Assembly (NCBI RefSeq): GCF_037042905.1
Contig: NC_087245.1
Coordinates: forward strand, 21,018,001-21,082,000
DNA: 64,000 nt
Direction of reading: 5' to 3'
Source: Lytechinus pictus
Lineage: Eukaryota
The notes under the pieces are model-generated. The model searched no databases. It was not told the origin of the DNA and saw only the letters and a program-made list of their open reading frames with translations. Below are positions 9,562 to 60,642 of this stretch, in pieces (the first letter of the stretch is position 1; every line of letters starts with the position of its first letter). The position numbers and the translations under genes were made by a program.

Positions 9562-9741
9562 ATGACGACCTTCATGCCGGACGTCCAGTCCTTCTCCAAT
9601 CCGGAAAACATCTTCCGACTTTACTTCATCCCGCCCTCCTCCCAAAAGCGCAGGCGTTACAGATCATTCTCCTTTCGCCACAAGATGCGTCTCTCTACAA
9701 CTGCAACCGCCAACACATCCGGAGATGCGGCTGAAAAAGAA
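9562..9741 (+). CDS. Candidate alternative first coding exon (60 aa, MTTFMPDVQSFSNPENIFRLYFIPPSSQKRRRYRSFSFRHKMRLSTTATANTSGDAAEKE), phase-0 donor
   Basis: ATG at 9562, open for 180 nt, GC/CpG clearly above the flanks. Ends GAA|GTAGGT, after which the sequence becomes AT-rich and intron-like. No domain recognised. Confidence 0.6.
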
Positions 9742-11767
9742 GTAGGTAGTCAAATCCACTGAATTATCCACTTTCTTGTTTCTTGAAAACTCATTTCTTT
9801 GTAATTATTATGTGGATATTTATATAATTACATATATTTATCTTGATGCTTGCGATATACATTGTATGGGCTCATGCATTGTTTATTCATCCACTTATTT
9901 CCAAAATTTCATGTTCCCCAACATTGTGTTGCCAGTGATCATTATTCTGTCAGTTTGAGAATTTTGTGATGTATTGTTTTTTTTTCTTTCTTTAGTTTTA
10001 TGTGAATATCATATAAACACTTCTCTGTATGAAGTCTAAATGTTGATTGATAATCTTTCTAAAAATGCAATTTCAATTTCATTCCATTATTAAATATAGT
10101 TACAATATAGCTAAGAACACATCCTGTGTGCATTGTTTTTGCATCTCATAGGAATAAAACCCCACTTGTTGATCCAGGGTCTTATTTCAATATTTTGTTC
10201 TTTTATTTGACCTCATATCTCCAGGTAACATCAATCATATTTTCATGTAAATTTTAGAATATAACCCCCCCCCCAAAAAAAAAAAAAAAAAAAAAAAAAG
10301 GCAGAAAATGCATGATTAATGCAATGGTTTTTTAAAACTTTTTTTTAACTTATAGACTTGTAATAATTTACAAAGGATAGTTACAATGTACATAGGTAGA
10401 AATTTTGTACTCCAATTTTATGTAGCTGAATAAATGTAAATTATCATGTCTAAAAGTATATGACACGATGGGCACCTCTCTTTATTTTAATGACATACTT
10501 ATTATTTTCCACTTTAGTTGATTCCAGTCAAGATATTGTTAAATACCTTTCACGTCCCTAAAAAAATATTTAAGTGAAATTCATAAATCAAAACAATTTT
10601 GTTTTAAATTTGATAACAAGATTTATAAAACTATGTCACTTTTCAGATACTTGTGCCTCAATTTATCAAAAGTTTTCAGGACAGGGAATTTTGCACTTAC
10701 ATTCGTCTTCGCTTCTTTGCCTCAATGTTTCTTGCTCGACCTATTCATTGCATTTAACTGGTATCCCCTCCCCACCACCTCATAATAAGATCAACCCAGT
10801 CACTCTTATACCCGAAATTTGCGTTGTTTCCCCTTTCATTAAATAAATTTCTCCCTCCCCTTCTTGTAAGTGAATTTTTCACTCACAGGCTGAGAATTTG
10901 TGTACAAATCCCCATTCCTCACTCTGATGTGAGAGCATCTCCCTTTTCTTTTTCTAAAAAATATAATTTAGTATAAAATATATCAGTTGTCTGCGAGTGA
11001 CAACCTTTTCTTTTTGCTTGTCAGAAAACTTTGTAAAACAAAAGTGTCCCAACTCTCAAGAAATCTTTGATCTAGCTTTTGATCACCTATAATTCCTTGG
11101 TTTTGCTACTGTCTATGTACTGCTTTATGCTGTATATTATAACATGCCTTTAATAGTCACCAGCAAACCATTTCATGATGGTTATCATGCATGGGCAAGA
11201 ATTGCTTGCCAATTACCCTGTTTTTAGATGTGTGTGCAAAATGCGACAAAGCAATATTGATATGTGTTAATGTGTTTACATGCAGACACTAGGAATATGT
11301 TATCATTTTCTCCTTGATATATTTTGAATCCCCCTCTGTTTAATTCTTGGTTTTTGTAAAAACTTTGAATGATTTACAAAAATATCACGCCCTCAATATC
11401 TGCATGTGACTTGGTGAATTTGTTTAAAGAAAAACATTACAAATATAAAAACAATAACATCCAGTTCTTTGAAACCATACAAATTCTTCAAATGATTGAC
11501 CTTCCAATCTAATATCACTGAAAGTGAAGTGGGATTCATGTCTCAACCACACATGTATTGATCAGTATGTAATGCACAATATGAACATTTATGACCTTAA
11601 CACTTTATTGTGAGGTATGCATGTTGTCAACGGCAACTGTTTAATGATCTCCAAATGATCTCCATTAAAAAAGTCACCGTATGCAACATGTGCAAAACCT
11701 GCAAAAAGGCTATATTGGCAACACAAATTACCCATAAATTCCACAGACCTACTATTTTTATGACATC

Positions 11768-12613
11768 AGGTGGTTTCAAACCGCCTCGATCACAAGAATC
11801 CCCGTTAAATTACTAGACATTTTTCATGCTAAAAAATACCAGATAATTATTCTAGCATTCAGACCGCCCCGAAACACACTCTGCGGGGAAATTTCTCTAA
11901 GTTATGAGCATGCGCAGTACTGTCTATTAGCAGACGAAGAAGCGCGCGCTTTTCAACAGTGGTACGTATCGCGATCGTGGGACGGCCGGCCGGGACAGGA
12001 GATCTGCCTGCGGCCGGCCTAGCTCTAGCACGTACTAACTATACTCGATCGTATGCGCAAATCATTTGTTCTCTTGATCATCATCTGCAATTGCACTAGA
12101 TTTCTCTCCACATTGAAATTAAGGCCTTGGTGGCCTCCTCACTCCAGTGCGATGTCATCTGGTATGAAAATGTAGAATACCGGTAAATATCACCCTTAAT
12201 TCGCTAAACTAATTTTTTGAAGAAGAAGAATGAACTGCCGAGTCAAAGTCGAACCCCGAGTCACGTCGCATGAAAAGTGTTTATCGCTGCATACACTGGC
12301 GCTGGCCAGCCGTGCGGGCTTGCTCACTCGGTATGCCTCGCATCAGCCTCGTATATCATGCATATCGAACAGCGCGCACTATGCACCGGAAATTCATTTA
12401 TCGCGGTGATCGATGGGATACAAGTTCTCGTACTTTGCTTTCAGATCGCCAAAATACCCACGACCTTGGAAAAATCCCCGCGAAAGTTCTTGTAATTTCG
12501 CCAAGTACCTACTATTTAGCGGGTATTTTCTTTCGGGGAAATTACGCGTAGTTTGCTTTCACATTACCAAAATACCTGGAACTGACGAACTTCGAGGCGG
12601 TCTGAAACAACCT
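11768..12613. mobile_element. Non-autonomous TIR element, PIF/Harbinger-like, CpG-rich body
   Basis: 22-bp TIRs AGGTGGTTTCAAACCGCCTCGA / TCGAGGCGGTCTGAAACAACCT (2 mismatches), flanks ATC/ATT (probable 3-bp TSD); no transposase ORF. Confidence 0.85.
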
Positions 12614-13205
12614 ATTTTGTGAACGTAAATTTCAGATTCAGTCTTCCAGGTGTTTATTTATATTAATGACTACATTTCACCATTTCACAGTGACATCTTT
12701 CAAATTGTACTCCATGTATAGAAACTTAACAAATAAGGTGATGATATGAGATGATAATATAAGTGAATACATGTCTTGAATAACTTTTATGTAGATCTGA
12801 AATTCTCATATCATTTTTAAATTAAGTATAATTAAATATGAATTTTATTTCAGTTTTAGTTATATTTAATTTCAAAATAATATGATTCTAGACGTGTATT
12901 TTGCAAGAAAAGAAAATTTGCTAACTACAACAAAATATTCATATTTAGATTTTCTTCAAACATTATATCATTTTTTTTTCCTCAATGACATTGTGCCAAA
13001 ATGGAAATAACTGAAAGATACAGCCAGCTTGTGACCAAAACAATTCTATTAAAAAACAAACAACCCCCCCCCAAAAAAAAAAAACAATTCTATTCCATCT
13101 TGAACTATCTTGGGCCTACTAGTGGTTCTTTGCAAACTTGCATAGCACAATAAATGGTATATCAATTGGCTTAGTCACATGTGATATTTCATAGAAGCTT
13201 TCCAG

Positions 13206-13417
13206 GAGGGAGTTTTACAAAGATTTAAGTATGACTTAAGTCGCACTTAAATGCTGACGCGTACATGATATGCAACGCACGATCTTATTGATAGGTACGT
13301 ATTAGTACGCGTCCTCATGACCCGATCTGAACAATGCGGTCAAGCCTTTCATACCTTATGCTACTCGGTATTTAAGTGCGACTCTAAGTCATACTTAAAT
13401 CTTTGTGAAACAACCCC
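13206..13417. mobile_element. MITE (Harbinger/Tourist-like), copy 1
   Basis: ~45-bp TIRs (..ACAAAGATTTAAGTATGACTTA(G)AGTCGCACTTAAAT / ATTTAAGTGCGACTCTAAGTCATACTTAAATCTTTGT..); homologous along its length to 49535-49745. Confidence 0.88.
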
Positions 13418-13603
13418 CTCATCCAAATTGTATTGTCTGTGCAGAAAAGGGAAGATACGCTTTGTGTGAGCCCTGTTTAATTTTGCAGTGTATTGAAAAG
13501 TGCCCCAGTCTTGTTTTAAAAAAGTCATGATGAAAATAATAATGATCAGTCCATTTATATAACTCAGTTACATGCATATACTCTACTGGGCTTAATACTT
13601 GGT

Positions 13604-13751
13604 ATCATTATTATAATATAATATTACCCCAGCTGTAGCTGAGCTGCTATAAAGGCACTAAAACATTCAAGGAGTAATCCTTCTGGGTACCCATTCACCT
13701 CACCTGGGTTGAGCGCAGCCAATATGGGCAAATTTCTTGCTGAATTAAAAC
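13604..13751 (-). mobile_element. tRNA-derived SINE family 1, 5'-truncated (tRNA head missing)
   Basis: Matches body and tail of 30467-30680 on the minus strand (TTCAGCAAGAAATTT...CCCAGGTGAGGTGAATGGGTACC...GGGGTAATA). Confidence 0.75.
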
Positions 13752-14075
13752 AATTATGTAATATCAAACTTATAAACTCATGTCCTTAACAGCCCCCTTG
13801 CACTTTAATGCACCTTCCTAATGCCACAGTTACACCAACGAAAACCGAATCCAAACCCATTTTACCAGTGTGACTGAGGTATTAATGTGCACCCATTCCT
13901 TTAATGTCAACCAATAGATTCAAAGTACATCATTATCCAGCTCATATACCATCTCTTGATTCCACCCATATTTTCATCTTCTCTGCAATCTTCAGTTTCA
14001 CTTCTTCTCATCATCTTGTCTGTGAAGCATCCATATGCTGGGGCCTTTACCCTTCACAGGCGACTGCTTACTTAC

Positions 14076-14147
14076 ATGACTGTGCCCAGTGGCACGAGAC
14101 ATCAGAGCCCCACGGTTTCTATCTCTGACCTTTTAAAAGACGAAAGA
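14076..14147 (+). CDS. Possible alternative first coding exon (24 aa, MTVPSGTRHQSPTVSISDLLKDER)
   Basis: ATG, 72 nt open, locally raised GC, moderate phase-0 donor AGA|GTAATC. Confidence 0.3.
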
Positions 14148-15823
14148 GTAATCAGCATTATGTTCGTGTTCTATTCTCATAAGGGTCTGTTCACATCATG
14201 TTAAACTGTCTCGCTTGTAGCTGCAGGCCTCTCCGGCAACACTAAGGAATTCTTTAATCAACCTCGATCGTACATGTAATTTCTTTGCTCCATATGAACC
14301 AACCAAAGTATGAGTGAAAACAGAATGGAATGTAGCACAAACAGATTAAAACAAAATAATCATTAGGTTAGTCAACATAGAATTGAAAGAATTTTGTGAT
14401 TTGAGTAGGGCATTTGTCTGAAGTCTTTATTTTCCATTTATTGTGTTTGATTTATTGAATAATTTAAATTACATGTTCAAGGAGAAATGCAACAGTGTTT
14501 GAAAATGTGAATGTTTACAAGTGTGAAGATATGTAACTGAATGTCATTAACACTAAATAGATATCTTTAGGAATGGCAATTTGACAAGAAAAATAAGTAC
14601 GCATGCTCCACAAACTTCCCAAAATGCATGATAACTGGTTTAGAATAAAGAAATCATGCAGTATTGAAATGCAACCAATGACTGTTCTATACTATTAGCT
14701 CATATGCAAATTCAAAAGCTTTCTCTTACATAAATTGAAGGGAAATATGAAAGATGTGAGTTTGGAATTTGATAATGCAGTAATGAAATTGCATTACAAA
14801 TTTTGTCTGCTCCACCATTAGGGGCAGCACACATGTTATAGCACTTAAGGTAATAAGGCCACAAACCAGAATCATGGTTGACTGACTCTTAAAATCCAGA
14901 GAGAATTTGTCAATGGTACAGAATTTAAAGAAATATTCACATAGATGAAATAACAAGTTCACATTTCGAGAGGGGATAGAGAGATATATATAATTACAAA
15001 AAAGACAGATAGAGAGACAGACAGACAAACAGAGCTTGAGAGATACAGTTTTAGTAGTGCATGGAAGAGGCTCAAAGCACAAAGGATATTGTTTATTCAT
15101 GACTGTGAACATGCTTCTTGTTGGCAACTATATGGAATAAGGATTATTTTCCTCCAAAAGAAAAAACAAGTTGACAAAAGGAGTGGGAAGTGTAATAAAA
15201 ATGTTCTGCCCCCTGTCGGAGTATGTTTGGTTTGTGTAACAAGTTTGGTTACATCATTCTAAAAAATAAAAGGCTTGACTCTCAAATATTGCTAATCACA
15301 TAATGCTATGCAAATTTTCTGAATTACATTTTTTTTTACATCAGCTTTCATTTTGGTTTATTGTCAAACAACCTTTTCCTGAATAAAAAGATTCATTTCC
15401 TGAGCATTTCATTAAAATAATCTTGATATTCCACGCAGTCGGTGTTGGATTCATGGATATTTTTGTTGAGTCTTGTCTCTTAGCCTCCTGCCTCTCAAAA
15501 CTATAATGCAATTAACAACAGAGGGAGCAATTCAACCATCAACCTGATGGTAACTCTAAAATAGCTTGAAGTTGAATTGCATTCTATTGCATTTCTATTT
15601 CAATACCAGCCAAATATGTATGGTGAAAATCATGAATAGAAAATATATGACTTGTTGAAGTAAGGAGAATATATTATCATTTATCACTTAAAGAATCACA
15701 TTGTAAGAATATTGTAGGTTCCACTGTACCAAAGAATATGAGAATTAAAACTAATATACCTCAAAATAATTTATTGATGTGTATGTTTCAACTTTGAGAG
15801 GATTAGATCAGTTATGGTCTATA

Positions 15824-16649
15824 CAGTGCGTCCCACAAAAAACGAAACCGAGATTTATCAATGATTTTTCATAGCTTTATCACAAATACAATAGATAAAT
15901 GACCTCCCATTTTGAAGCTTAGAATCTCCTCTTTCATCTGACAGTACTTAGACTATTTCTCATTCACGCATGAGTGAGCAAAAACAATTTGAAAAGGGGA
16001 TACCAAAAAGTCACTTGGCGGGCCGTATCTGGGTTTTAAAAGAAAACCACATTTTTAAAAAGTTCAATATCTGCTCTTTAATTTGATACCTCAATTACAG
16101 AAAATGGTCAAGAAATAAGAAAGTTCTGGTTATTTGAAATAAGGCTTGAATTTCCATAATTTCATAAAATGAAGAGGTTTTACAGGCTAGCGTTCAAACT
16201 CACTCCACACTCCGTTTTGTTGACGATCAGCCATGCATTAAGTCTTGTTAAGTTTTGTTACCGTGCAATAGCTTCTGTGGGAAACCGGTGAAAACACGTT
16301 TATTTAATGAAATTATGGAAATACAAGCATTGTTTCGAGGGATCATAACTTTTTTACTTCTTGACCATTTTCTGTGATTAAGGTATCAAACAAAAGAGCA
16401 GATATTGAACTTTTTAGTCATGTGATTTTCTTTTTGAAATTCAGATACCCCCCGCCAAATGAGTTTTTGGCATCCTTTCTTCGAATTGTTTTTGCTCACT
16501 CATGCGTGAATGAGGATTAATCTAAGTAATATCAGATGAAAGAGGAGATTCTAAGCTTTAGATTGGTAGGTCATTTGTCTATTTTATTTATGATTAAGTT
16601 ATGATAAATCATCGCTAAATCTCGGTTTCGTTTTTTCTGGGACGCACTG
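15824..16649. mobile_element. Tc1/mariner-type foldback MITE with ~350-bp inverted arms
   Basis: TA|CAGTGCGTCCCACAAAAAACGAAACCGAGATTT ... AAATCTCGGTTTCGTTTTTTCTGGGACGCACTG|TA; TA TSD; arm complementarity continues to about 16175/16295. Confidence 0.93.
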
Positions 16650-18098
16650 TATAAGGTTTTTTCCCCTTTCAAGTTACCAAATATGTCTTCTTACTTGTTA
16701 TGAAATTCATTTGAATTAACCTTTAGCTTGTATAAGATTTGTGAACAAATGCATTATATTGAAATGTCAGATGAGTGAAATAATTTTTCTGTGGATTTAT
16801 AATTCTTACTTTCATACCGATTATTATAAGTGATATGAATTATAGATTTTGCTTATAGATCATCCTGAATAGTTACAGAGATTTGACAATATATTTTCAG
16901 CAGGAGCGAATATTCAAAATGGCTCTCAGGAGAACTAATCCTTATATATGATTTTAAAAACATTTTCTCTATTTTGAAATAATTTTGATATTGTTTTGAA
17001 AAACAAAATTCCATATGAATCAAATGCAACACTATTAGATTGGTATTTTTGAATTATGACTGGTGTGTTTATATGATTCCAAAATACAGAATATTGATTT
17101 GAAATCTAGAAATATTAATCAGTAACTTTAGTATCAACATAGTTCATTGTTCATATAAAAAATATCAAATATAAGATAAAGCATGCTTGAGAAGTGTTAT
17201 GGATGTTTGCATTAGTAAATTAGGATGTTTTATTTTAGATTTCGCTGATAATAATTAGTGCTAAGTCAAACAAGTTGCATGTTTGTAAATTGATATGCAT
17301 GTGTATTATATTGATCTCATATCATATTATGATCATTGATGTTAGTTTGAAGAAAAAAATCGCTCCCCTTTCAACTTCTGACCCTGGTTGTCTATTTAAA
17401 TGTTTGTCAGGTAAGATTTCCAAGGATTTTTCTTTTAAATAAAGAATTGTTCTATTTCCTTTCATTTTTATCCCCTAAAATTTGGGATTTGGATGCATAC
17501 CCCCTTCCTCATTGATAGATCACATACCACTGAAAACAAAGATCTTGAGCCGTCAATCTATTTTGTTGGAAGAAATATAAATTTTTTTAATGCTGGATGG
17601 AACTACATTTTATATGAATTGAAGTAAAACTAGCTGCATTATTTATGTCTTCTATTTTTGTCCACGGCTGTTTATGAAATATTCACTAGTGGGATGAAGT
17701 TTTGTCAATCTTTAGGCAATATCTTTATGATGGTGATTTTGTGCTGTCAGTTTGACAGATAGTGATTATATCATCGGATTTAGATAAATATATGAAAGGT
17801 GTAGCTATTTTAAAGCAGATACGAACCAATAGCCCCATCTCCAGTCCAACTACTCATACCTGGCCAGTTTCCTGACCCATAATGCTAGTGTAGTCTAGTT
17901 ATACAGTCCCACTTGAATGATAACATGTTAATTAACTACTCAATACATTTATACCACAATAATTATGTTACCCAGTAGCAAAACCATTTTTTCTCTCTCA
18001 AAACATTTTAGTTTCTCTATACAAATACAATTATAGGTCAATTTATTCTCTGTAGTAGGCTATTAGTATATATTTGAAAACATACATTTTAAGACCAT

Positions 18099-18904
18099 GG
18101 GTGCGTTTATCCGCCACTTTTTTACCCTAGAATCATGATTTGAATCATGATTCTGCAGAATCACGATTGCGTTTAGTCGAAATTGAATATAATCATGATT
18201 AGAATCACAAACATGAAACACGAAAAAAGGGGCGTTTGGAAAGACGTTTCTGCAGAATCACGTACGAAAATGTTCGAATAAACGATATCGTGATTACAAT
18301 CATGATTATATGACCTCACTGTTGTGTCGGGCTACTTTCGGTTTGACTCTTGCCAAGCTCAAGGCGCTCTATATGCTCATTGTATGTACATGACTATGAA
18401 TTCATTTCTTGTCATGTTCAAGTTCTGTGTTGGTCATCGCATCGTCCACTACTTTTCATTTTTTGGTCATGTCTTCAACTTCAAGTTCTAGTAAATGAAT
18501 TAACTGGACAGACAATGATCTCAGTTGTTGTTGAGTATACAGTATCAATATCAAATTGGATCTACGCTGAAATTCACTTCCGAACACCATTTTGGATAAA
18601 CTAACAAGATGAATAGAAGCATATGGACCCTTTATGATAGAAGTAAACAAAATGAGGTATAGACTGAATTCTGATGGAAGCAAAATAATTTTTGAGAGCC
18701 GAAACACGTGCGAAAAACTTCCTCTGTCAAACTGCGCACTAGTGATGCGCACTGGATTGGCCCGAATCTGAGGAGAAACAGCATTGGAATGAAGGTCGTC
18801 TAAACGCTAATTCTGTGATATTGTGATTCATGTTTGTGTTTTGAATCATGATTCAAATCATGATTCAAATCATGATTCTGGCTTGAGGTCGCATAAACGC
18901 AGCC
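18099..18904. mobile_element. Non-autonomous TIR element (PIF/Harbinger-like) with subterminal AATCATGATT repeats
   Basis: CAT|GGGTGCGTTTAT ... ATAAACGCAGCC|CAT (12-bp TIR, 1 mismatch, 3-bp TSD); tandem palindromic AATCATGATT units at both ends. Confidence 0.85.
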
Positions 18905-19128
18905 CATGTCTTTATAACACACAGTCAATGAGAGACCACACACTGTTCACTTTCCCTTACTTATCTGCCTCAATACAAAATTAAGATATGATCTCTATCT
19001 TTCTATATTATTCTAGAATACTCTCTAGGATCCTGTGGCACAAAACTTAAAAATTGATTGTACAAATGATTTTCAGGTTTGTGATCATTCATATAACATA
19101 TACAATGATCAATTGCTTAGCTGTGTGT

Positions 19129-19155
19129 ATGACTATCGCAAGCAGCCTCGGACAG
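19129..19155 (+). CDS. Possible very short first coding exon (MTIASSLGQ)
   Basis: ATG plus 27 nt, strong donor CAG|GTAACC, phase 0; short enough to be chance. Confidence 0.22.
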
Positions 19156-19419
19156 GTAACCTTTTAAAGTGAAAGTATCCTTATTACTGCAGTGTCTATT
19201 TAGTTGGTTTATCAGTACCTTGGTTCTCTTAATAAAGCCAGGCACTCGGGCGAGGAGTGGAATTGCTTTCAGTGGAATCAAACAAGCGGAACTTTGCCAT
19301 TTTTATTATTTTTTTTTAAATGAGAGTGGATCCAAGTGTCTTCTTTGGCCGGTCAGGCATGCATGGCATATGATGTCAGGAATGACAGATTCAAGTTTAT
19401 TGCATATCTATAGAGCGAT

Positions 19420-19620
19420 GAGAGAGGAGGGGGGGGGGAGAAGGAGAGAAAGAGAGGGAGATGGAAGGAAAAAACAAGGGATGATTGGTGGGCTGGGAAA
19501 GGGAAAAAATAGAAAGCGAAAGAAGCAGATGGTTCAAGGAAAGGAAAATAAAGAGATGGAGAAAAGAGGAAGATAGTGAGAGGCACGAGGGGAGGAGGCA
19601 TGAAGTGGAAGGGGTCGATA
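19420..19620 (+). repeat. GA-rich low-complexity tract
   Basis: Purine-only runs including a G run at about 19429-19438. Confidence 0.8.
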
Positions 19621-21974: not shown

Positions 21975-22040
21975 ATGGAATCATACGCGGTCTTCCTCTT
22001 GTCAACAGGGCGAATTAAGGAGCTGGTGTGTGCCGTCTTA
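21975..22040 (+). CDS. Possible alternative first coding exon (22 aa, MESYAVFLLSTGRIKELVCAVL)
   Basis: ATG, 66 nt open, donor TTA|GTACGT in phase 0; could instead be a uORF in the leader of the 22666 exon. Confidence 0.25.
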
Positions 22041-22665: not shown

Positions 22666-22746
22666 ATGGGTGATCAGAACCAGTATGACTCCTACGGGTC
22701 ACTTCCAGGAGAGTTTTCATCAGAGGACGACGACGGTAGTGACAAG
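22666..22746 (+). CDS. Candidate alternative first coding exon (27 aa, MGDQNQYDSYGSLPGEFSSEDDDGSDK), phase-0 donor
   Basis: ATG in GTGATGG context, 81 nt open, acidic protein-like peptide, strong donor AAG|GTAATT. Confidence 0.6.
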
Positions 22747-25813: not shown

Positions 25814-25837
25814 CTAATTCTGATGATATCATTTCGT

Positions 25838-27070
25838 CTACCTCTACTACTACCACAAACTAATGCTGCTGCTGCTACTTCTCCTCCTCCTGCTCCTCTT
25901 CCGCCTCCGCCTCCTCCTCTTCCTCCTACTACTACNNNNNNNNNNNNNNNNNNNNNNNNNNNNNNNNNNNNNNNNNNNNNNNNNNNNNNNNNNNNNNNNN
26001 NNNNNNNNNNNNNNNNNNNNNNNNNNNNNNNNNNNNNNNNNNNNNNNNNNNNNNNNNNNNNNNNNNNNNNNNNNNNNNNNNNNNNNNNNNNNNNNNNNNN
26101 NNNNNNNNNNNNNNNNNNNNNNNNNNNNNNNNNNNNNNNNNNNNNNNNNNNNNNNNNNNNNNNNNNNNNNNNNNNNNNNNNNNNNNNNNNNNNNNNNNNN
26201 NNNNNNNNNNNNNNNNNNNNNNNNNNNNNNNNNNNNNNNNNNNNNNNNNNNNNNNNNNNNNNNNNNNNNNNNNNNNNNNNNNNTACACTACTACTATACT
26301 NNNNNNNNNNNNNNNNNNNNNNNNNNNNNNNNNNNNNNNNNNNNNNNNNNNNNNNNNNNNNNNNNNNNNNNNNNNNNNNNNNNNNNNNNNNNNNNNNNNN
26401 NNNNNNNNNNNNNNNNNNNNNNNNNNNNNNNNNNNNNNNNNNNNNNNNNNNNNNNNNNNNNNNNNNNNNNNNNNNNNNNNNNNNNNNNNNNNNNNNNNNN
26501 NNNNNNNNNNNNNNNNNNNNNNNNNNNNNNNNNNNNNNNNNNNNNNNNNNNNNNNNNNNNNNNNNNNNNNNNNNNNNNNNNNNNNNNNNNNNNNNNNNNN
26601 NNNNNNNNNNNNNNNNNNNNNNNNNNNNNNNNNNNNNNNNNNNNNNNNNNNNNNNNNNNNNNNNNNNNNNNNNNNNNNNNNNNNNNNNNNNNNNNNNNNN
26701 NNNNNNNNNNNNNNNNNNNNNNNNNNNNNNNNNNNNNNNNNNNNNNNNNNNNNNNNNNNNNNNNNNNNNNNNNNNNNNNNNNNNNNNNNNNNNNNNNNNN
26801 NNNNNNNNNNNNNNNNNNNNNNNNNNNNNNNNNNNNNNNNNNNNNNNNNNNNNNNNNNNNNNNNNNNNNNNNNNNNNNNNNNNNNNNNNNNNNNNNNNNN
26901 NNNNNNNNNNNNNNNNNNNNNNNNNNNNNNNNNNNNNNNNNNNNNNNNNNNNNNNNNNNNNNNNNNNNNNNNNNNNNNNNNNNNNNNNNNNNNNNNNNNN
27001 NNNNNNNNNNNNCTTACTACTACGACTACTTCTACTACTACTACTACTACTGTTGCTGCTGTTATTACTT
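25838..27070. repeat. (CTA/CTC/CTG)n trinucleotide microsatellite spanning an assembly gap (N 25936-26283, 26301-27012)
   Basis: CTA/CTC/CTG triplets on both sides of the N blocks and in the 17-nt island between them. Confidence 0.9.
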
Positions 27071-32777: not shown

Positions 32778-32791
32778 GTCACCATGGTAAC
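32778..32791. promoter_or_regulatory. RFX X-box motif GTCACCATGGTAAC
   Basis: Exact match to the GTHNYY-AT-RRNAAC consensus; function untested. Confidence 0.4.
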
Positions 32792-44809: not shown

Positions 44810-44884
44810 ATGTTTGGGTTTATCGCCCGAAACTTAGGCAAGGGCGACATGGGAGGCCAGAAAGAAGGAGATAAGGTCTTCATT
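44810..44884 (+). CDS. Possible alternative first coding exon (25 aa, MFGFIARNLGKGDMGGQKEGDKVFI; second in-frame ATG at 44849)
   Basis: Two in-frame ATGs, locally GC/CpG-rich, phase-0 donor ATT|GTAAGA. Confidence 0.35.
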
Positions 44885-48966: not shown

Positions 48967-48996
48967 GTGCGGCATTCAGATGGTCTTCGCCTTTTG
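48967..48996 (+). CDS. Candidate 30-nt frame-preserving cassette microexon (VRHSDGLRLL in phase 0)
   Basis: CTAAT branch-point motif at 48896-48900, ~80-nt AG-free U/G/C-rich tract, TTTCAG acceptor, 30 nt stop-free, weak donor TTG|GTGACA; downstream intron rich in TGCT/YCAY. Confidence 0.4.
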
Positions 48997-49534: not shown

Positions 49535-49745
49535 GGAGGTGTTTCACAAAAGATTTAGGTACGACTTAGAGTCGCACTTAAATGCTGATGCGTATATCTT
49601 ATACAATGCGCAATCTTATTGATTAATATGCAGTAGTGCGCGTATGGGCAAGATCTGACCAATGCGGTCATGTCTTTTATAACACGCACAACTAGGCATT
49701 TAAGTATGACTCTATGTCATACTTAAATCTTTAGGAAACACACCC
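49535..49745. mobile_element. MITE (Harbinger/Tourist-like), copy 2 of the 13206-13417 family
   Basis: Same TIRs and interior as 13206-13417, same orientation; flanks CAG/TAG. Confidence 0.88.
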
Positions 49746-50000
49746 TAGCTAATGGCAAGATAGATCCGAGACAGTGCTAAGATATTTTTTTTATCCTGAA
49801 GTCGGTTATATGCAATGAAGATGGTTTGCATCTAAATAAATTTTAACAAGAAGTACCTTAAACCAAGCTATGATCAACTCTGAGATTTAGATGACATTTA
49901 TTTAGTCTTTAAGAAACTACAATGTCCTGAAATATTCTTTAATTCAATTACACATTGATTGTCTCTGACCTCAAAGGATGCCTCCATCAAGATATTAGCG

Positions 50001-50014
50001 GTTATCATGGGAAC
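50001..50014. promoter_or_regulatory. RFX X-box motif GTTATCATGGGAAC
   Basis: Exact match to the GTHNYY-AT-RRNAAC consensus, at the start of a G-rich, CpG-containing block. Confidence 0.35.
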
Positions 50015-53000
50015 AGTCCGATTTGTTTGTCTTGGAATCAAAGAGCATCAGATGCTCTCCAGCGGTAATCACAACTGTGAACAGTACGGGGGTGGTTTGT
50101 TTTGAAAGGAAATGGGAGTAATTTTTTGTGTAATACAAGTATCCTATAAAGACTGGAGGCAAGGTTTTGGGGAGGGGTTTGTACTGATGTGCGCATGGGG
50201 GGTGTTACTGTAGGGATGAAAGGTAGAGTGGCTTTTGCGCGAGAGCTCTCAGGCGGAAGGATCAGTTGCTCACAATTTTGCATCAAGACGACATTGATCT
50301 AATCAAGATTCAGAGAAAATGCTGTTCGGATTAGATTTTCATATTCACTTGAGAAGAATCTGATTTTAGTCTCAACACCAAGAGGTTGCTTTATTTGGAG
50401 CGTTGAAAACACATCTAGGATGGAAATTTTCTCAGCAGCGTCATCCTTTGTATTCCAAGTGACGTTCTTCGAGCTCCCTTATGGATAATTCAAAGACTTT
50501 ACTGGCGGGTGGTGATGTTTTGTCTAAAAAGGAAACCTCCCAAAGGAAGCATGTGTTTGTTTTCTTTAAAGATTATTCAAAGCATGTTTCAAGTTATGGT
50601 AGACCGAAGGAATAACGATACACATATAGGGGTGTTGCTATAATCCGAGGCACTGCTGACGTATGAAAGGTCGATCATATTAATAATTTGAGCCTGCACC
50701 TGGGTTTAGCTGAAGCGGTGCTCAAATATGAATTTTATACATGATGTGTGCTTCAGTATTGCATCTTCGCAAGAGATGAAGGGATCTATGTAGTTTCATA
50801 ATGTTGAGAGCTTGAAGTGTGTAAGCTCTTTTTTACTGTTTGCAGATTCTCTCACCATCTAAGAGTAGAGTGTTATGAGATTTTAAAATTCTCAATTTGA
50901 ACTGGATATGATCTATTGTCCATGATGACTTAAAAAGAAGTGAAGTAAAAATTAATTCCCTCTACACGTAAATTATGTGCACCGATTAAATTGCAATTTT
51001 AAAACACTTACTGAATTGTTCAGTCTAAAATAAATTTCCATGTATCATCTGATGTTATTTTGTGTCAAGTATTAATGAAATTGATCTTTACCAGAAGAAA
51101 ATATCTTCAGTTATGATAAGAGTAGGTCAGGAATTTTCCCTTACTTATCAATCCAAGCCTTCCTTTCACTCTTGCATCTAATCTGTCTACAAATATATTC
51201 CTTATCTCCAGACATGATTTATTTTCAAAAGTCAAGAGTCTTTTATCTTTTTATAATATTGGTATTCATGATAAGCCTGTACCCTATGTGTAGAATGACA
51301 TAAACAATTCTTCAAGAAAGGGCTTAGGGGAATTGATAGAGAGACACCAATGTCTTCATGCGTGTCTCTGGGCTGCGTTCAATCAACATCTTTTTTAGAC
51401 TGTAGAACGTCATGGTATCCAAGTATATTTTCATCCATCGCAAAAGTCAGTGTCCTTCAAAGGACAAACATTAAATGCTGAAATATATTCCTTTTGAGCC
51501 AAAGTCGATAAAACTTGCTTGAAAGCAATGGCCGTCTCAGAAATGATTCCATGATGGGCCTTTTTACGGTTCAGACATGCATTGCGTGCACTTCAGCTGA
51601 GCTATACTGTTTGGCTTGAAATGAGAGATGATAAAAAGTTAATGAAAAAAATATCTTTAATGCTATCAAGCAGTGCCCATATTTTGTGCAAACTGGCATT
51701 GTGATTGTTTTATCATGTTTATAAATCTAGCTCAAGGAAAGTAATTGAACACACCATGGTCATCATGCATTGCCAATAGTTTGGGGCATCCATCTTGTGT
51801 TTTTGTTTTCATATCAATAAATTACTATCAATCTCCAATGAAGGATACTGTCACATTCAGAACCATAAGGAATTTATGTTTTCATATGATACAAATCTAA
51901 TGCCCTTTTAGCAGTGGTAAAGACCCTTGTCTTGATTTGTTTGAGTGTTTTCGGTCTGATGATTATTTCAGCTGTTTGTTCGAGGGTCAGCTCTTCAGAG
52001 ACATATCTGTGTTTTGCAGTGAAAGTGACATTTCATTTCATCCATGCCCTCAGGGTATCTCACACCGCAATCAGAAACCCTTCTTGAAATGGAATGTGTG
52101 GGACTATTAAATGATGTTTGTGTTCCGGCCAATGGCAAATGCACACAGGGTCAGTGAACTGTGACATTTAGGCAATTTTTAAACATCTAAGTATTACGTG
52201 TTCCTGATGATTCCTTTTCAAATTTTAGAGCTCCTCAAACCGTCCAATGAAAATTTAGTTTCATAATGGTATTTTGATTTTGGTTTATTCATTCATTCTT
52301 AGAACTCATTCTACATGAATAAATCAGAAAATCATGAAAATCCCTCTTTTGACAAAAATGATTAAAATAAAAAAGTTAATACATGATCTAAGTAAGATGT
52401 GAAATCATCTTTTTTCTGGATTTTAGGGTTGTTAACTACTCAAAGTAGTGAAATAATCAGGAATTGCTTGCAATTCATTGAAATAATTATAATTGTTCTT
52501 TTGGAAGAAGATATTGGAAGATTATTTGTAATAGACAGCAAAAGTTCTACAATCTGTAGTCTACTATCAACAAGTTTTATGTGCATCAAGAAACATGTAT
52601 CTCACCTTGAGCATACAAGACTTGTTCTGATTTAGCATTGATTAAAAACTTGTTTCTTATACATCTCGTTACTTCAACTTGAGTCCAAAGGGGGTGTTCC
52701 AGCAAGTAATATGGAATTTAAAGATTGATTATAAGATTGATGCAACAGCTGATGGGGGAATCAAAGAATATTTCAAATTATGAGATATGATATTGCAACA
52801 ATCCACAGACTTGCCAATAATGTCAATTAATTTTGCCTAATCCTTAAGTTTGTTTTAATTATCAACTAAAACCCATTTTTAAATAGTTTTAACAATGATG
52901 AAACACAGACAAGTTTTTATGATAAATTGCATCCATACCACGTAATAGGTAACATAATTTGCTACTCAGGGCATGAGGCAATTATTGCTTATTCCACGGA

Positions 53001-55421
53001 GACTAATAGGCGAGAATTTTATCTCATTAAAATAGAGGTCATTGAAATCATTATGTCATACCTTGTAAGTTTAATTTAATGTCTCATTAGCGACGGTAAG
53101 AGTGCTTGAGGAAAACTTGACTAGTCAGTCCAGCTGATAATTAACACTTATTAAAGTACAGTGCAGACAAAGTGAACCTTATAAAAATGCTTCAGATACT
53201 CTTCTTTTGTGGTACTCTAGATTGGCAAACATCTAACCATTTTTTAAAAACATACTGAACAGTAGCATTATTTTGTTCAAGGTTATTCTTCCAATTGTTC
53301 CTGATGACTATGATTTCAAGCTAATTATTGTCCCTCAGACTTTGAATATAATAGATGATATTTAAAAATATCAATCATATTACTACATGTATATATTCAT
53401 GTTTTAAGGTTAATACTTAAAGTAACCATGCCCTAGTAACTCAGGGTGTTAGTTATCAAATTATACTTTTTACTTTTTTATAGATTATACTTGATAATGA
53501 TGTAATCAATAGCAAATATCAGTCATATTATTAATAATTAGGATTTGTGTGATGGGGCTTGGCTAGATAATGTTCCTTCTGGAAATAGAGAGTGCTTCTT
53601 CCTATTCTAGTATAATCTAATTATATCATCATCATTGGAAACTCTTAATCCCCTGCAGCTGGTCCGAAGATTGAGATTTGGTAATACCACTTTATTAGAT
53701 AATGGGATTCGTCTATCATATTTATGTAGTGACACAGTTCTCAACATATCAAAGGCCCTCATATGTTAATTGCAACATAGGACATGGCTAGGAATAAAAA
53801 AGATTAGAATAGAAGAATCCTCTAATTTGGAGGTGTATGATGGAATATTGATGGATTGATCAATATAATTAATTCAAAGAACACTCACTGACAGGAAGTT
53901 GGATTGGTAAAAAATGAAAATGCTAATTAAACTGTTGTCATTTTCAGCTGTCGTGGTTCAATATGAGATTGTCAAATAGATTCGTTCTTTAAAGATTTAT
54001 TTTGTACAAGCTTTTCCAAATTCATCATGATAACATTTGCCTTATACTAGAGATAGGAAATATGACACATTTTTTAAATTGAAAGCAGAGGCTTAGAAAG
54101 TCCTGCTTTATTTTCATTGAAAGGATAATTAGCGATTATTTTGGCTGAGAAAATGTAATATTTTATTCTTCATATATACAAGGGGAAACATTCTTTCATT
54201 TGAGAGAATATCAGACCTTCAATCCATTTGACTAGAGGCCATTATAAATGTATGAAGCCATTTGCACGAGAATTACTGCATAGTATGTCGTCTAGAGCGA
54301 TGAGTATTACATCTTCAAGATGAATAGTACATGTATGGTGTTTTGACAGTTTCTTCTGAAACCGATGAAGGCTAATTTTTTACGAAGGCAGATGCGCTTT
54401 CAGGCTGTATCTTTGATTGATGGAAATTGCGAATATTGTTTTTTTGTAAAAGGGACTAGTGTTGCACATTGCAAGCGCCAGATCCTGTCTACTGTTTAAT
54501 TGTTGTTGTTTCAATAGCTTCGTATCTATCTAGCGGAAGTATCATTCTTGATGAAGATGGGAGCATTCATTATTAGTCCCGGTGCATAATAGACTAGATG
54601 AATTTTTAATAACCATCCTGTGGATGCAGATTTTTTGTATGTGAAAGGGGTCGAGTCTGGTCCTTGTTTACACACATGCCCCCTTCTCACATGTAACTCA
54701 TTACTGATTCCAAAATTAATGTGTACATTGCATTTCCAATATCCAGCTGTTGCTTGATGTATCAACCGTGAATCTATGATTATGTCGGGGATGAGCCACA
54801 TCGCGGATTCCTATTCCTAGCGGCGTCAAAATCTGTTCCCTTACCTCGCCTTCTAATGAGTTTCGAGGAATGCACGCCAGACTGAGTGCAATTACCAAAA
54901 TGGGCTAAGAAGATCCCCTGATGGAACAACGAATGTTGCCTGGCCTGGTTGATGAGTTTATTTTTCTTACACAATCTTCCTTTTCCAGGTCGTAATTTCT
55001 GCATTGATCAGAGGCATGATATCTAATGTGAGCTGGACTATCTGTGAAGAATTTGATGATTTTTTGTGTATTTTTTGTACTTCTTCCATGAGAAATGTGA
55101 TGTAATACCAGACAAAGAGGCACATAGTAGACTTTACATATAGGTTGAGTTTCGTATTCTCTTCCACTGTAATTGAAAAAATGTGCAAAGGTCATCGCAG
55201 TCGCCATGGAGATTTGAAGCACCAATAATGACTATGAGTTGTAATAATTAATGATGTCCATTAACTTTCGATAGCCTACGACCACAACCTATCGTCTGCA
55301 AGTGAAAATCACCTGAATCGTCTCGTTTTGTAAATTTGGAGAAACGTGTGAATTGGTCAACTCAAAGATTTGTTAAAATCGCTCTTTGATCAGGTCATTG
55401 GATTATTCTTACCCCTGAAAT

Positions 55422-55442
55422 ATGGATGGCATGAGCAAAATT
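55422..55442 (+). CDS. Possible very short first coding exon (MDGMSKI)
   Basis: Ends at consensus GTAAGT in phase 0 and marks the end of a ~1.1 kb CpG-containing block (about 54280-55440) before AT-rich sequence. Confidence 0.3.
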
Positions 55443-58289
55443 GTAAGTTACCTGAAAATATTATTGATTTATATTATTTAGTAAGCCATGCATAATGAAG
55501 CAAATTAGAGGTATAGAAAATTAAGAATTATAATTCAAAAGAAACTTCTCTTTGCTGTTACTTTAATTTACAATTTTCTAAGAGACCTATCTAGAATGCA
55601 AAATTTAAGGATACCTGCTCTTTATGGAACTATATTATGTATTAATGATTTTACAATCTACATAGTCTTGTAAAACATTGAAAATACTGTGTATTAAAAA
55701 AGAATTCAGTAATCTAGAATTTATATAAACAGTGGTAATCAACTGCTTTTTAAGATTAGGTACTTGATATTCAAAATCAAATGTTATGCTTTAAACATTA
55801 TGCAACATAGGAGAAGGCAATTCTATTCTGTGATATACCACATGATAAAAATGTGATCATATTGAAATGTCTTTCTGGTATAAAATTTGAATTTCTTCTT
55901 GAAGCGTGAATTTTTTATTGATCAACAAACAAGGCAGCGTAAAAAAGCTCTCAAATATAACCTAAGATTTAAGATTTTTTTAAAGCAGAATGTAACTTGA
56001 TACTCCATGTGATATTTTTTCACCTGTAAACAGGCCGAGCGGCTTCAAAAACAACCAAAGGTGAGAGAAATAGATTGTATTTACAGACAGAGAAGTGTTG
56101 GTTGCATGTTCATGAGTAAAGTTTTTGTCTTTAATTAAAAAAAACCACAAAGATACCTTTTCTTTCCTTTTGTATGTTAGGAATAGCCAAGGATACATTT
56201 AATTTAAATTGTTAATTGTGCATTATATCTTTGTCTTGGTTATCCAGGAAGTTAATTTGAGAGGTCTGCCTGAACTCTTGGATAACTTAAATTGTGGTGA
56301 AAATCTCTAGTGAGCTGTTCCCGGATGTGAATAAAAAATCTCTAACAGAAGATGATAAATTTATCAGGTCATTTAGGCTCTCAAACTATAAAACTGTCTC
56401 AGAGTGATGACTACAAAATGATTTTTATTCTTTCCCTATTCTTAACATTTAATCATGAGAAAAAAGGCCATCAAATGTATCAAACATACAGTGTAAACAT
56501 GTTTTTTTTTACATCTTTGGCATCTGAAATTTCCAGCATTAACTTATATACCACAGCTTAAGTTAAGTCTTTGCCAATGATAATTCAGAATAGCGGCATG
56601 TGGAAAGTGCACAGGCTAATCAAGAGTTCAGAATCTGAACAAGACGATATCAAATGACTGATCTCTTATTGTCAGTTTGATCAAATTTGATAGTAAAGTA
56701 GTGCTGTGATTTGGCATGTTGAGAGAAAGAGAGAGTGAGAAAGATGAGAGAGTGACAGACAGAAAGAGGAGGGATGTATTATGAACCGATAGAGACAGAG
56801 AGAAAATGAAATGATTATTATCAAACCGGAATGTGAGAACAGAGTATTAAGAGACATCAGTCTGAATACCTCACTGTATATTGACACTATAATCTTATAG
56901 ACACGACCACTTTTGGTGAAGTTATGTTAAGTGTCTTAAGCTCTCCTGAAATGAACTGTTCATAGATTTTTTTTATACCTTCCTCCTCTCACAGTGCCAC
57001 CACGATGCCCCTCCCATGTTAATATTTCATCCCCCCCCCCCTTCCCTCCCCTCTCTGCATAGCAAGGGTCAAGCCAAAATTGACTCTTCAGTAAGATTGA
57101 CTTGACATAAGTGCCTTCACACCCCTGTACGGCTGGTCACCCTGTCTCCTCACCTCTCCCGTGAACGGTCTCACAAAAATTGATTTTCACACCGTCAAAG
57201 GTCAGATTTGCCTACATCTTCTAGCGATTAACTATTGGCCATGAAGCAGGGGATGAAAGGGTGAAATTATCCCTCTTATGGGAAATTAAACCAATTAAGT
57301 CTGGAGAAGACAGACTACCATCTGCGATGGTTAAATTTTTCTCCACCACTCCCAGATAAAAAATATCGTGTAATGGATTATAATTGAGAGATTGAAAATG
57401 AATAAATGATTTTAAGAATAACATTTCATAGAGATGGAGCATGAATGAAATAAGGCACAATGAAAATAGAAATTGAAAATATAGAGGAAGGAAAAATTAA
57501 AGAACGAATTATTAGAAAGTTTATGAATCAATAATTGAATAGTGTTTATAGATACATCTACAAAAGACCAAGTGAATCGATCATTCATTTAATCATTCAA
57601 TAATTACAAACAAGCAAATAGGACACAAAAAAACCTGATAAGGTAACCTCATATATCAGTTTATAATTGAAATAGAAATATAACCTGTGCACTTCTTTAT
57701 TTGAAAGGTAAATGTACAAGATTCCTTACAATATCAAAAAGGACCGTTTGCATGTAACCATAGTATATTGCATTATCAGTACTGAATTTGTCTATATATG
57801 ACTTTACTTAATAACCATATATCCCATTAAATATTTAAAGTAGAAATACAAGCTGACCTTCTCTCTGCAATTAACCAGTAATCAAACCTTGATGCTTTGT
57901 TCCAGCTTGTCATACACAGTTCATTGTCAAGCTAACTTTTATGCAGTTTATATAAATGGGGTAAATTATAAACCTTGACATTTTAATAAAAATAGGAAAA
58001 ATGACAGGGCACCTGTAGAATCCAATAACGAAAGCTTCACAAAGGGACAGCAACAAAAGGCCATATAATGCTTGAGATCCGGAGAAGGTTTATGAATTGC
58101 GGTTGTCGTCGTCGCATGATTAAATTTTGTCCTGCTGGTTGTTGCCATCTGAAGTAGATATGAAAAGAGTGCTCATTAGTGAGCTTTTGTCCAGCTTAAT
58201 CCAATTAAAAACATTCTACCCAGAGCCCTCCCATTATTCATTACCCTTTATTGAGGCTTATCTTTATAATGCCTTTTCTATAACACTAT

Positions 58290-58410
58290 CACTTTCTCTC
58301 CCTCTCTCTCTCTGTTTTCAGTCTCTACCCCACCCTCTGTCTCTCTTTCTTTCTCTATCTTCTCTCTCTATTTTCTATTTTTCCCTTCTTTCTCTCCCCT
58401 CTCCCTCCCA
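58290..58410 (+). repeat. CT-rich low-complexity tract
   Basis: Pyrimidine-rich (CT)n-like run. Similar tracts at 5520-5670, 28810-29060 and 43060-43210; GA equivalents at 6150-6210, 23680-23800 and 61280-61440. Confidence 0.8.
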
Positions 58411-60513
58411 ATACAATCCCACTCTTAATTCCCCTGATAAAAGTTCAATATAACCTTGCATTATCCGGCTTACGTTAGACCAACTAAGGGAATGCAATGT
58501 GTGCATAGATCGCTATCAGCCATTGATCCGATCAATACCGGCATGTGTTTCAAGCTGAAAGATATCGACAGGTCCCGATCGGTGCAGGCTGTTAACACGT
58601 TGCTCCCATTCTGTCCCTTCTGCGTTTTGGCATATTAACAAGTGCTTTTTAATGCTGATGAAGGCAAGTGGAGAGAGCGAGAGAGGGTTGACGCTCGACT
58701 GGATGACAATAGATAAGGGAAATTGGTAGACAGATGGTGGTAGATGATGGTGGTATTGGTAGAAACATCCATTGATACCAGGATATTTACAGATCTGAGT
58801 AGCAGAGAGAGAAGTCATCACAACTGGTTATCAGGACCAAACCCATCACTGAAGCAGAAGAAGTCCATGAAAGAACACCCTAAGGTCATCTACAAACCTT
58901 GTCATATTCAAGAAGTTGCATACAGCCTTCGTCATCTCCTCAATCCACTAAATATTTTAAAGTCCATGCGACTGGTCAACAATGGGACTGAATAGGTTTA
59001 TTAAGTGCATTAGTATTGCTACACCATGAGAGTCTTGTAATGCTATTCTTTCATGATGAAACATTGACATGCCACCGTTGTTGTTGACAATGACGGGATG
59101 ATGATGCGACCCCTGGCAAGAGGGTATTGTTGAAGGCCTAAGACTTTAATCAGCTGATGGAACATGGCTTTTATTCTCTGAAACCTATCAACCTTGCATG
59201 AGATGCAATAATAATGCGGAGGGACAAAAATTGACTCTTACTTCAATAAAATGAACCAAACCCACGTCGTCGGTATGATGGATCATACGTCGATATGACT
59301 TTTTATTCAAAGTCATTTGCAACGCTTCCAATATCCCTGACAGGCTTTGTGAATCCTTGGGGTATGGAATATGATGGAGGTTCCAATAAAGACTGACATA
59401 TTGACTAGTAATTCCTTTTTGGCAACCTAGCACCAAATGTGCAAAAATATTGGATACAAAGACAATCTATCAACAACAAACATAGCCCTGTGTATAAATA
59501 GAAAAGTGTATTCAACTCTTTCAGTTTTCATCATGTGTTAAAGACAAGATTATGGATTTTTCATACCGTTACCCAGGAATATCCATGCATTGAAAATGCT
59601 GTGATCTGTGAAGTCACCAGCTTATATATAACTGGTGCCACACTGCCTCAACAGGTTTAGCGTGTCAAGTGGAATTTCATGCATTTAAGATGCACTTAAA
59701 AGGTCAGGAATAATTATATTGGTAATAGGACCAGGAAAAGAGTTTCATTTGCAATTTTCATTTGCAAAACGAGGAACAAAGTTTAGGGCGGACACCCATT
59801 CGGAAGTTTGACATTGCCGGTGGCGTATCAGTGCTAGCAACTGAACAGGATAGATCACCATCTTACTGAAGATCACAGGTCACAGTCGTACAATCTTAGA
59901 CATGCCTTTAAATAATGTCTTCAAAACCCTTTCATAGGGATTCTTGCTACATTCCAGAATTACCATGGATTAATGAATGGAAACAGGAGTTATATCTCTT
60001 CAGACTCATACACAGAGGCTTTGTTCATTTGGTTTTGCAGTATTTTCTTTTGAAGTCTCATCTAGACTGCTGGATTGTTTCGTCCAAATGATCATGTGAG
60101 CTTACATGGAAGATTTATACAGTTGAGCCACGATGATCTCTAATTTGTTTCTCTAAAGCTGTTGCTGTGAGATGGATGTTGTTTTGTAGGTGCTAAAAAA
60201 GATTGGTATGAATCCTCAGTGGACAAGTAAATTGAAGACATAACAGGAAAAGCTCTGAAAAATATTGTGGGAGAACACAACATCTATCAAAATATGACTA
60301 GAGTGTGAAGATCTATTATAAAACTGAGGATATAAAAGGAATAAATCAGATAATAACATACATAGCATGAATGTGCCGTTCTGATGACTTTTTGCAATTG
60401 TGAAAAAAGCCTGCCTTAGAACACGGGTGCTTCTAGAAAGCTTTCTAACAACCTTTATCTCAAGGCTCTTTGTCTTGTAATCATTTGGCACTTGAATATC
60501 TACCGGCTACAAG

Positions 60514-60642
60514 ATGCTTAGTGGAACCGTTGGATCCGCCGGGGGGCCGGGCAAGTCCCCTTCTAAAGGGGGCAAGAAGGTTTCCCTGCCCCAAAACCAG
60601 CAGGGCAACAAGCTAAATGGCCCTACGATGATCGAGCTAGAG
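60514..60642 (+). CDS. Candidate alternative first coding exon (43 aa, MLSGTVGSAGGPGKSPSKGGKKVSLPQNQQGNKLNGPTMIELE), phase-0 donor
   Basis: Sharp GC-rich island in AT-rich DNA, AAGATG start, 129 nt open, donor GAG|GTATCT followed by a T-rich intron-like tract. Confidence 0.65.

What the first reader, a model, noticed from the sequence alone, without database searches (positions are those of the whole stretch)
9562..60642. Putative array of alternative first exons, all in phase 0, feeding one downstream gene
Seen: at least three compositionally distinct ATG-initiated mini-ORFs (9562-9741, 22666-22746, 60514-60642) and about five weaker ones end at GT donors after a whole number of codons. All are on the + strand, with unrelated peptides and no obvious acceptor at the coding start. 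Known: ankyrins, plakins, PDE4s and clustered protocadherins splice many promoter-specific first exons to a shared exon in a fixed phase. Inference: this 64 kb is a promoter-choice cassette generating many N-termini for one protein whose constant exons lie 3' of the window. Caveat: I looked for phase-0 donors, so the short candidates may be chance matches.
Basis: partly seen in the sequence, partly recalled or inferred. Interest (0 to 1): 0.8.

Follow-up and report, generated by a model that had tools for sequence, protein, structure and literature searches.

The report
Two real first exons, rest chance
Two of the eight proposed mini-exons are real, conserved, transcribed protein-coding first exons 51 kb apart on one strand, probably alternative starts of one large animal gene whose other exons lie outside the window; five others look like chance ATG-to-GT patterns, one is untested, and the architecture is an ordinary, well-known one.

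Summary
All eight named ATG...|GT mini-ORFs exist as described. As a class they are chance. The + strand in phase 0 holds 127 ATG-ORF|GTA hits of 7 or more codons and 40 of 27 or more. The other phases and the minus strand hold as many or more.

Two strong candidates are real:
- Exon 9562-9741 is held whole in RNA contigs. Against a relative it shows only in-frame indels and third-position-biased substitutions.
- Exon 60514-60642 is an exact conservation island, with 12 of 19 changes at codon position 3. RNA contigs and raw RNA reads stop exactly at its donor and continue into an exon reading E-L-V-G-G-T-A-E-K-R in phase 0. That exon is not in the window.

Candidate 22666-22746 could not be tested. 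Whether exon 9562-9741 joins the same acceptor was not shown; I put it at about 50%. The gene was not identified. The assembly gap lies inside a trinucleotide microsatellite and touches no candidate. This is alternative promoter and first-exon use, a known kind, with two supported exons rather than eight.

The parts
9390..9561 (+). Conserved upstream block, probably promoter-proximal sequence and 5' UTR of first exon A. At least 9440-9561 is transcribed. It sits in a CpG-rich patch (o/e about 1.0-1.2 against a window mean of 0.45).
   Evidence: Alignment A1 with the relative's contig L001 shows long invariant runs. All 30 sampled words of 9440-9745 are held in RNA run X1. CpG profile.
9562..9741 (+). 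First exon A coding part: 60 codons from ATG, ending in phase 0 before donor GTAGGTAGTCAAA.
   Evidence: One search gives the frame. RNA contigs of organisms A and B hold it; the orthologue P0001/L001 is 88% identical in protein, and the donor is conserved; the only indels are 3, 3 and 9 nt; substitutions by codon position are 5/3/11 (P=0.024).
22666..22746 (+). Candidate exon B: 27 codons, donor AAG|GTAATT. Status unknown.
   Evidence: One search shows it exists. One search found no homologue for the read-through ORF, which is a blank and not evidence. One search shows 40 equal-or-longer phase-0 hits on this strand by chance. No RNA test was possible.
58593..60513 (+). Transcribed block upstream of the ATG of first exon C, probably a long 5' UTR. 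One contig runs unbroken from 59600 to the donor. The transcription start is not mapped: about 58.6 kb in X1, possibly about 60.33 kb in some transcripts.
   Evidence: X1 and X2 contigs and X19 reads cover about 58593-60643, with nothing at 58001-58592; a more distant relative (L002) aligns at 75% over 58392-59264.
60514..60642 (+). First exon C coding part: 43 codons from ATG, with an in-frame stop 18 nt upstream, ending in phase 0.
   Evidence: orthologue P0004/L002, with the conservation island at 60506-60646 only; 85% identity against 61-64% in the flanks, no indels, substitutions 4/3/12 (P=0.007), 11 synonymous against 5 non-synonymous codons; held in RNA runs.
60643..60648 (+). Donor GTATCT of exon C, shown to be used. 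RNA continues with (G)AATTGGTGGGAGGGACAGCTGAAAAGCGCA, which reads E L V G G T A E K R in phase 0.
   Evidence: table 7: the same loose end in X1, X2 and 3 raw reads of X19; those letters are absent from the window at up to 3 mismatches.
14076..14147 (+). Weak candidate, not supported (chance level).
19066..19155 (+). Weak candidate, not supported (chance level). Hydrophobic, AT-rich peptide.
21975..22040 (+). Weak candidate, not supported (chance level).
44810..44884 (+). Weak candidate, not supported (chance level).
55422..55442 (+). Weak candidate of only 7 codons, not supported (chance level).
25936..27012 (.). Assembly gap (two N runs with 17 bases between them) inside a trinucleotide microsatellite. 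Not part of any candidate.

Best explanation
The window is the 5' region of a large + strand animal gene in a CpG-depleted genome of 35.6% GC. It holds at least two real first exons, each with its own start. Exon A is about 9440-9741, with its ATG at 9562. Exon C is transcribed from about 58.6 kb (or about 60.3 kb) to 60642, with its ATG at 60514. Each carries its own start codon, encodes an unrelated and probably disordered N-terminal peptide under purifying selection, and ends after a whole codon.

Shown: both are transcribed, both are conserved as coding sequence, and exon C splices from 60642 to an exon outside the window that continues the frame as ELVGGTAEKR.

Inferred: exon A splices to that same constant exon, so promoter choice gives one protein two or more alternative N-termini.

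The five short candidates are chance ATG...GT patterns. Candidate 22666-22746 is undecided. The gene was not identified.
For: Transcription:
- 9440-9745 is fully held in RNA run X1 and partly in 10 other RNA runs of two closely related organisms.
- 60400-60645 is held likewise.
- In the same runs, 58001-58592 and 60800-64000 are silent apart from one 155-nt contig. The contigs are therefore RNA, not contaminating DNA.

Splicing:
- Contigs in X1 and X2 and 3 raw reads in X19 leave the genome exactly at 60642/60643 with identical following letters.
- Those letters are absent from the window.

Coding:
- Substitutions are biased to the third codon position: 11 of 19 and 12 of 19.
- Exon A has in-frame indels only.
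- The conservation island matches exon C to within a few bases.

Same gene (indirect):
- Same strand, and the same phase 0.
- None of the 20 ORFs of about 100 aa or more tested matches any Pfam family.
- Holdings differ between runs, as expected for alternative promoters.
- Both Logan contigs end 26-27 nt into the downstream exon, within k-1=30 of the junction. Elsewhere the same assemblies show 61-nt SNP-bubble arms with 30-nt overlaps. This suggests a graph branch, meaning the downstream exon has other upstream partners (my inference).
Against: - No junction read was obtained for donor 9741, so the shared acceptor is not shown for exon A.
- The inferred other partners of the downstream exon should end in ..GAG or ..AGAG. 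Neither exon A (..GAA) nor candidate B (..AAG) does, so the branch argument does not implicate them.
- A polymorphism 27-28 nt into the downstream exon could also end the contigs there.
- Exons of a separate small gene between 9.7 and 58.5 kb cannot be excluded; short exons escape ORF and Pfam checks.
- A 1.9-kb 5' UTR full of upstream ATGs is unusual. The 58.6-60.3 kb block could be a separate transcript merged into one contig.
- Rate-limited homology searches found no annotated full-length protein carrying either peptide.
Confidence: 0.5

Rival explanations
1. Exon A and exon C are the first exons of two different + strand genes. Gene A would finish inside the window before about 58.5 kb, or overlap gene C. 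Nothing is shared.
For: Only exon C's splice was read. The two peptides are unrelated. RNA runs hold the two exons in very different proportions, which also fits separate genes. Phase 0 is the commonest intron phase, so agreement in phase is weak evidence.
Against: No recognisable coding content lies between them: the ORFs of about 100 aa or more tested have no Pfam match. A 48-kb stretch with no detectable exon is more typical of a long first intron. Contig ends suggest the downstream exon has several upstream partners.
Confidence: 0.3
2. One reading: about eight or more promoter-specific first exons across 51 kb all feed one constant exon.
For: Two members are real. Candidate B has a good donor and ATG context.
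Against: There is no excess of phase-0 + strand hits over other phases, the other strand or shuffles. None of the five weak candidates ends in GAG. They are AT-rich or hydrophobic peptides of 7-30 codons. No conservation or RNA evidence exists for any of them.
Confidence: 0.07
3. Exon C is the only true coding start. Exon A is a conserved non-coding or uORF-bearing leader exon or a lncRNA, and its apparent coding signal is noise.
For: The codon-position signal for exon A is modest: P=0.024, with 7 synonymous against 7 non-synonymous codons. The relative used is close, with flanks at 80% identity, and the upstream non-coding block is almost as conserved.
Against: Three independent indels are all multiples of three, whereas the flanks carry 5- and 15-nt indels. 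The open frame is kept from the ATG to the donor in both species.
Confidence: 0.08

Closest known systems
Multi-promoter genes with unique N-terminal first exons (PDE4/dunce, ankyrins, plakins such as shot/dystonin, KChIP genes); from my own knowledge of these families
   Same: Widely spaced first exons on one strand. Each has its own transcribed leader and ATG, an unrelated short peptide, and the same splice phase into a downstream exon. Usage differs between samples.
   Different: Only two exons are supported here. The shared acceptor is demonstrated for one of them only. The gene is unidentified, so orthology to any of these families is untested.
Clustered variable-exon arrays (protocadherin alpha/gamma, UGT1A)
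   Same: The idea of several first exons spliced to one constant region 3' of the array.
   Different: Those variable exons are large paralogous copies of one another. Here the peptides are 43-60 aa and unrelated, and no repeat family links the candidates.

Membership tests
Alternative-promoter gene with isoform-specific coding first exons (PDE4/ankyrin type) | Two or more first exons, each transcribed with its own upstream leader and not entered through an acceptor at the ATG | tested here: met
   9440-9745 is wholly held in RNA run X1. Contigs run unbroken from 59600 or 60332 through the ATG at 60514, so the AG at 60512-60513 is not used as an acceptor. Transcription starts are not mapped precisely.
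Alternative-promoter gene with isoform-specific coding first exons (PDE4/ankyrin type) | Each first exon is protein-coding from its own ATG | tested here: met
   Third-position substitution bias in both exons, in-frame indels only, and the conservation island equals the exon.
Alternative-promoter gene with isoform-specific coding first exons (PDE4/ankyrin type) | All first exons splice to the same downstream acceptor in the same phase | tested here: inconclusive
   Donor 60642 joins an out-of-window exon in phase 0. Donor 9741 is also phase 0, but its partner was not read. Contig ends hint at several partners for the acceptor.
Clustered variable first-exon array (protocadherin/UGT1A type) | Variable exons are tandem paralogues of one another | tested here: not met
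   The peptides are unrelated. The window-wide repeat search finds no family linking the candidates.
Clustered variable first-exon array (protocadherin/UGT1A type) | Many (more than 5) functional variable exons | tested here: not met
   Only two are supported. The weak ones are at chance frequency.

The most novel reading that the evidence does not exclude
The constant exon beginning ELVGGTAEKR receives four or more unrelated ATG-bearing first exons spread over more than 60 kb. These would include exon A, exon C, candidate B and the unseen partners ending ..GAG or ..AGAG. That would give an unusually rich N-terminal isoform series for an unannotated invertebrate gene.
Probability: 0.15. Interest if true: 0.4.

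Novelty: new member of a known kind. Interest (0 to 1): 0.25.

Why it matters
It gives two verified coding first exons and one verified splice donor for annotating a large, otherwise featureless 64-kb stretch. It also gives a 31-nt tag for finding the gene's constant part. Finally, it shows that scanning for ATG-ORF-GT patterns in one chosen phase has no discriminating power in this genome. If the two exons share an acceptor, the gene has promoter-specific N-termini, a common way to target or regulate isoforms. That would be useful for annotation but not conceptually new.

Tried and rejected
Searches that found nothing useful:
- The exhaustive phmmer search with exon A found only a read-through ORF in a relative and two spurious repeat proteins.
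- 90%-cluster searches with exon A, exon C and the candidate B ORF found only P0001, only P0004 and nothing, respectively.
- The query-length rule of the cluster searches prevents short peptides from finding full-length isoforms.
- The ESM Atlas and PDB sequences gave nothing.
- Exact look-ups of three window ORFs, meant to walk beyond the window or name the organism, were not on record.
- Two metagenome scans, one for the downstream-exon tag and one for a conserved exon C 26-mer, gave 0 hits.
- A paper search for the two SRR accessions gave 0 hits.
- Earlier scan notes gave nothing on the downstream region.
- Rfam found no families.
- RNA run X16 laid no reads, so it gave no test.

Tests and ideas set aside:
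- CpG o/e as an exon discriminator: exon A is in the top 2%, but the real exon C is unremarkable, so the measure is not usable.
- Looking for the unseen partners by the ..GAG|GT ending gave 40 sites, too many to discriminate.
- The CpG-rich block at 11.8-12.6 kb, considered as a further promoter, has 22-nt terminal inverted repeats and is transposon-like.
- The apparent strand bias of X19 reads at 59.4-60.2 kb rests on 2-4 distinct molecules and was not used.
- A bulk Pfam scan of 150 ORF references was left out to avoid sending a very long typed list.
Full report
**What the window is.** It is 64 kb of eukaryotic DNA with 35.6% GC and CpG o/e of 0.45, the signature of a methylated animal genome. 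Rfam finds no RNA families. None of the 20 ORFs of about 100 aa or more tested matches any Pfam family. The two N runs (25936-26283 and 26301-27012) lie inside a (CTC)n/(TAC)n microsatellite that continues on both sides. No candidate exon touches the gap and nothing in the finding is read across it. The gap only makes distances approximate and could hide a small exon.

**Checking the observation.** All eight named sites are as described: an ATG, an open frame, and GT directly after a whole codon on the + strand.
- With a GTA donor, + strand phase 0 has 127, 40, 12 and 3 ATG-ORFs of at least 7, 27, 43 and 60 codons.
- Phases 1 and 2 and all three minus-strand phases have as many or more.
- Four other donor definitions give the same picture. 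All phases and strands sit only about 1-2 sd above Markov shuffles.

The pattern in itself therefore carries no information. The five weak candidates (14147, 19155, 22040, 44884, 55442) have no support beyond it.

**Exon A (9562-9741).**
- All 30 sampled 31-mers of 9440-9745 are present in RNA run X1. Shares of 0.2-0.63 are present in ten more RNA runs of two closely related organisms.
- The exhaustive phmmer search found one true relative, P0001. This is an ORF called on a 3-kb Logan contig (L001) that reads through the donor.
- L001 aligns to window 6835-9790 at 74-78% identity.
- Inside the exon, identity is 89%. The only indels are 3, 3 and 9 nt, whereas the flanks carry 5- and 15-nt indels.
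- Substitutions fall 5/3/11 on codon positions 1/2/3 (P=0.024). The donor GTAGGTAGTCAAA is invariant.
- The exon sits in the second most CpG-rich patch of the window.

I conclude it is a real, coding, promoter-proximal exon with at least 122 nt of leader.

**Exon C (60514-60642).**
- The region is held in RNA runs, with shares of 1.00 in X1 and X2.
- A more distant relative (P0004 on L002) aligns only in islands. One island is 60506-60646, which is the exon to within a few bases.
- Exon identity is 85% against 61-64% in the flanks, with no indels.
- Substitutions fall 4/3/12 (P=0.007), with 11 synonymous and 5 non-synonymous codons.
- An in-frame stop lies 18 nt upstream of the ATG.

**Laying reads on 58001-64000.**
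- RNA contigs of X1 and X2 and raw RNA-seq reads of X19 cover about 58593-60643. They are absent from 58001-58592 and from 60800-64000, apart from a 155-nt contig at 61305-61459. This serves as the silent-stretch control and shows that these are RNA.
- All three runs leave the genome at 60642/60643 with the same continuation, (G)AATTGGTGGGAGGGACAGCTGAAAAGCGCA. In phase 0 this reads ELVGGTAEKR.
- That sequence is not in the window at up to 3 mismatches.
- Contigs run unbroken through the ATG from 59600 (X1) and 60332 (X2). The AG just before the ATG is therefore not used as an acceptor, and this is a first exon, possibly with a leader of up to 1.9 kb.
- L002 also aligns to 58392-59264, which fits a conserved promoter and leader start.

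**Do the exons feed one gene?** This was not shown directly.

In favour:
- Same strand and same phase.
- No detectable gene content in the 48 kb between them.
- Very different holdings across RNA runs: X3 holds 0.60 of exon A and 0.05 of exon C, and X24 holds 0.00 and 0.47.
- An argument from the assembly graph. The Logan records behave as k=31 unitigs, with 61-nt SNP-bubble arms at 59569-59629 and 30-nt overlaps. Both exon C unitigs stop 26-27 nt into the downstream exon. That is where a branch is expected if the downstream exon is also joined to other upstream sequences.

Against:
- The implied partners should end in ..GAG or ..AGAG, which fits neither exon A nor candidate B. There are 40 such sites in the window.
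- A polymorphism could mimic the branch.

My estimates are about 0.5 for a shared acceptor, 0.3 for two separate genes, and under 0.1 for the full eight-exon array.

**Candidate B (22666-22746).** It has a good donor and ATG context. Its read-through ORF found no homologue, which is a blank result and not evidence. No RNA test remained.

**Comparison with known systems.** The architecture matches multi-promoter genes with unique N-termini, such as PDE4/dunce, ankyrins, plakins and KChIPs (from my own knowledge). It fails the defining features of protocadherin/UGT1A-type arrays: the exons are not paralogous and are not numerous. The gene was not identified. Searches of protein clusters, the Atlas, PDB, exact look-ups, metagenome contigs, papers and earlier scan notes all came back empty.

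**Verdict.** This is an ordinary and useful annotation result. Two exons are real, one donor is proven, five candidates are chance and one is undecided.

Noticed in passing
window 11768-12613: An element of about 846 bp that is the most CpG-rich block in the window (o/e 1.1-1.3). It is bounded by 22-nt terminal inverted repeats, AGGTGGTTTCAAACCGCCTCGA / TCGAGGCGGTCTGAAACAACCT, 91% complementary. It looks like a young non-autonomous DNA transposon, not a promoter.
   Followed up: partly
window 15820-16653: A large nested inverted repeat with arms of 227 nt (86%) and 144 nt (83%). This is a hairpin-forming or foldback-type element.
   Followed up: no
window 13239-13417 and 49570-49745: Two copies, about 80% identical, of a repeat of about 180 nt that itself contains an internal inverted segment. 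It is a dispersed repeat family.
   Followed up: no
window 93-164: A polypyrimidine tract followed by AACAG|GTAAGTG, an acceptor juxtaposed to a strong donor. If real, a + strand intron already spans the start of the window, so further exons of the gene may lie upstream.
   Followed up: partly
window 58392-59264: A block of about 870 nt conserved at 75% with a relative whose introns are otherwise unalignable. It starts about 200 nt upstream of the first RNA coverage and is a candidate conserved promoter and leader of exon C.
   Followed up: partly
window 61305-61459: A lone 155-nt RNA contig at low depth (2) in run X1 only, purine-rich, inside the intron after exon C. Its meaning is unknown.
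   Followed up: no
window 59926-59935: Organism B reads (X19) lack about 10 nt here and differ at 3-4% across the leader, while the coding part shows no listed differences. This is an indel between the two organisms, not a splice site.
   Followed up: partly
window 9416-9470: A near-invariant stretch, GAGAGACGCCTCGTTGCCGTGGGGGC..CAAGCCCAGGTGGATT, about 100-150 nt upstream of the exon A ATG. It is a possible conserved promoter or leader motif.
   Followed up: no
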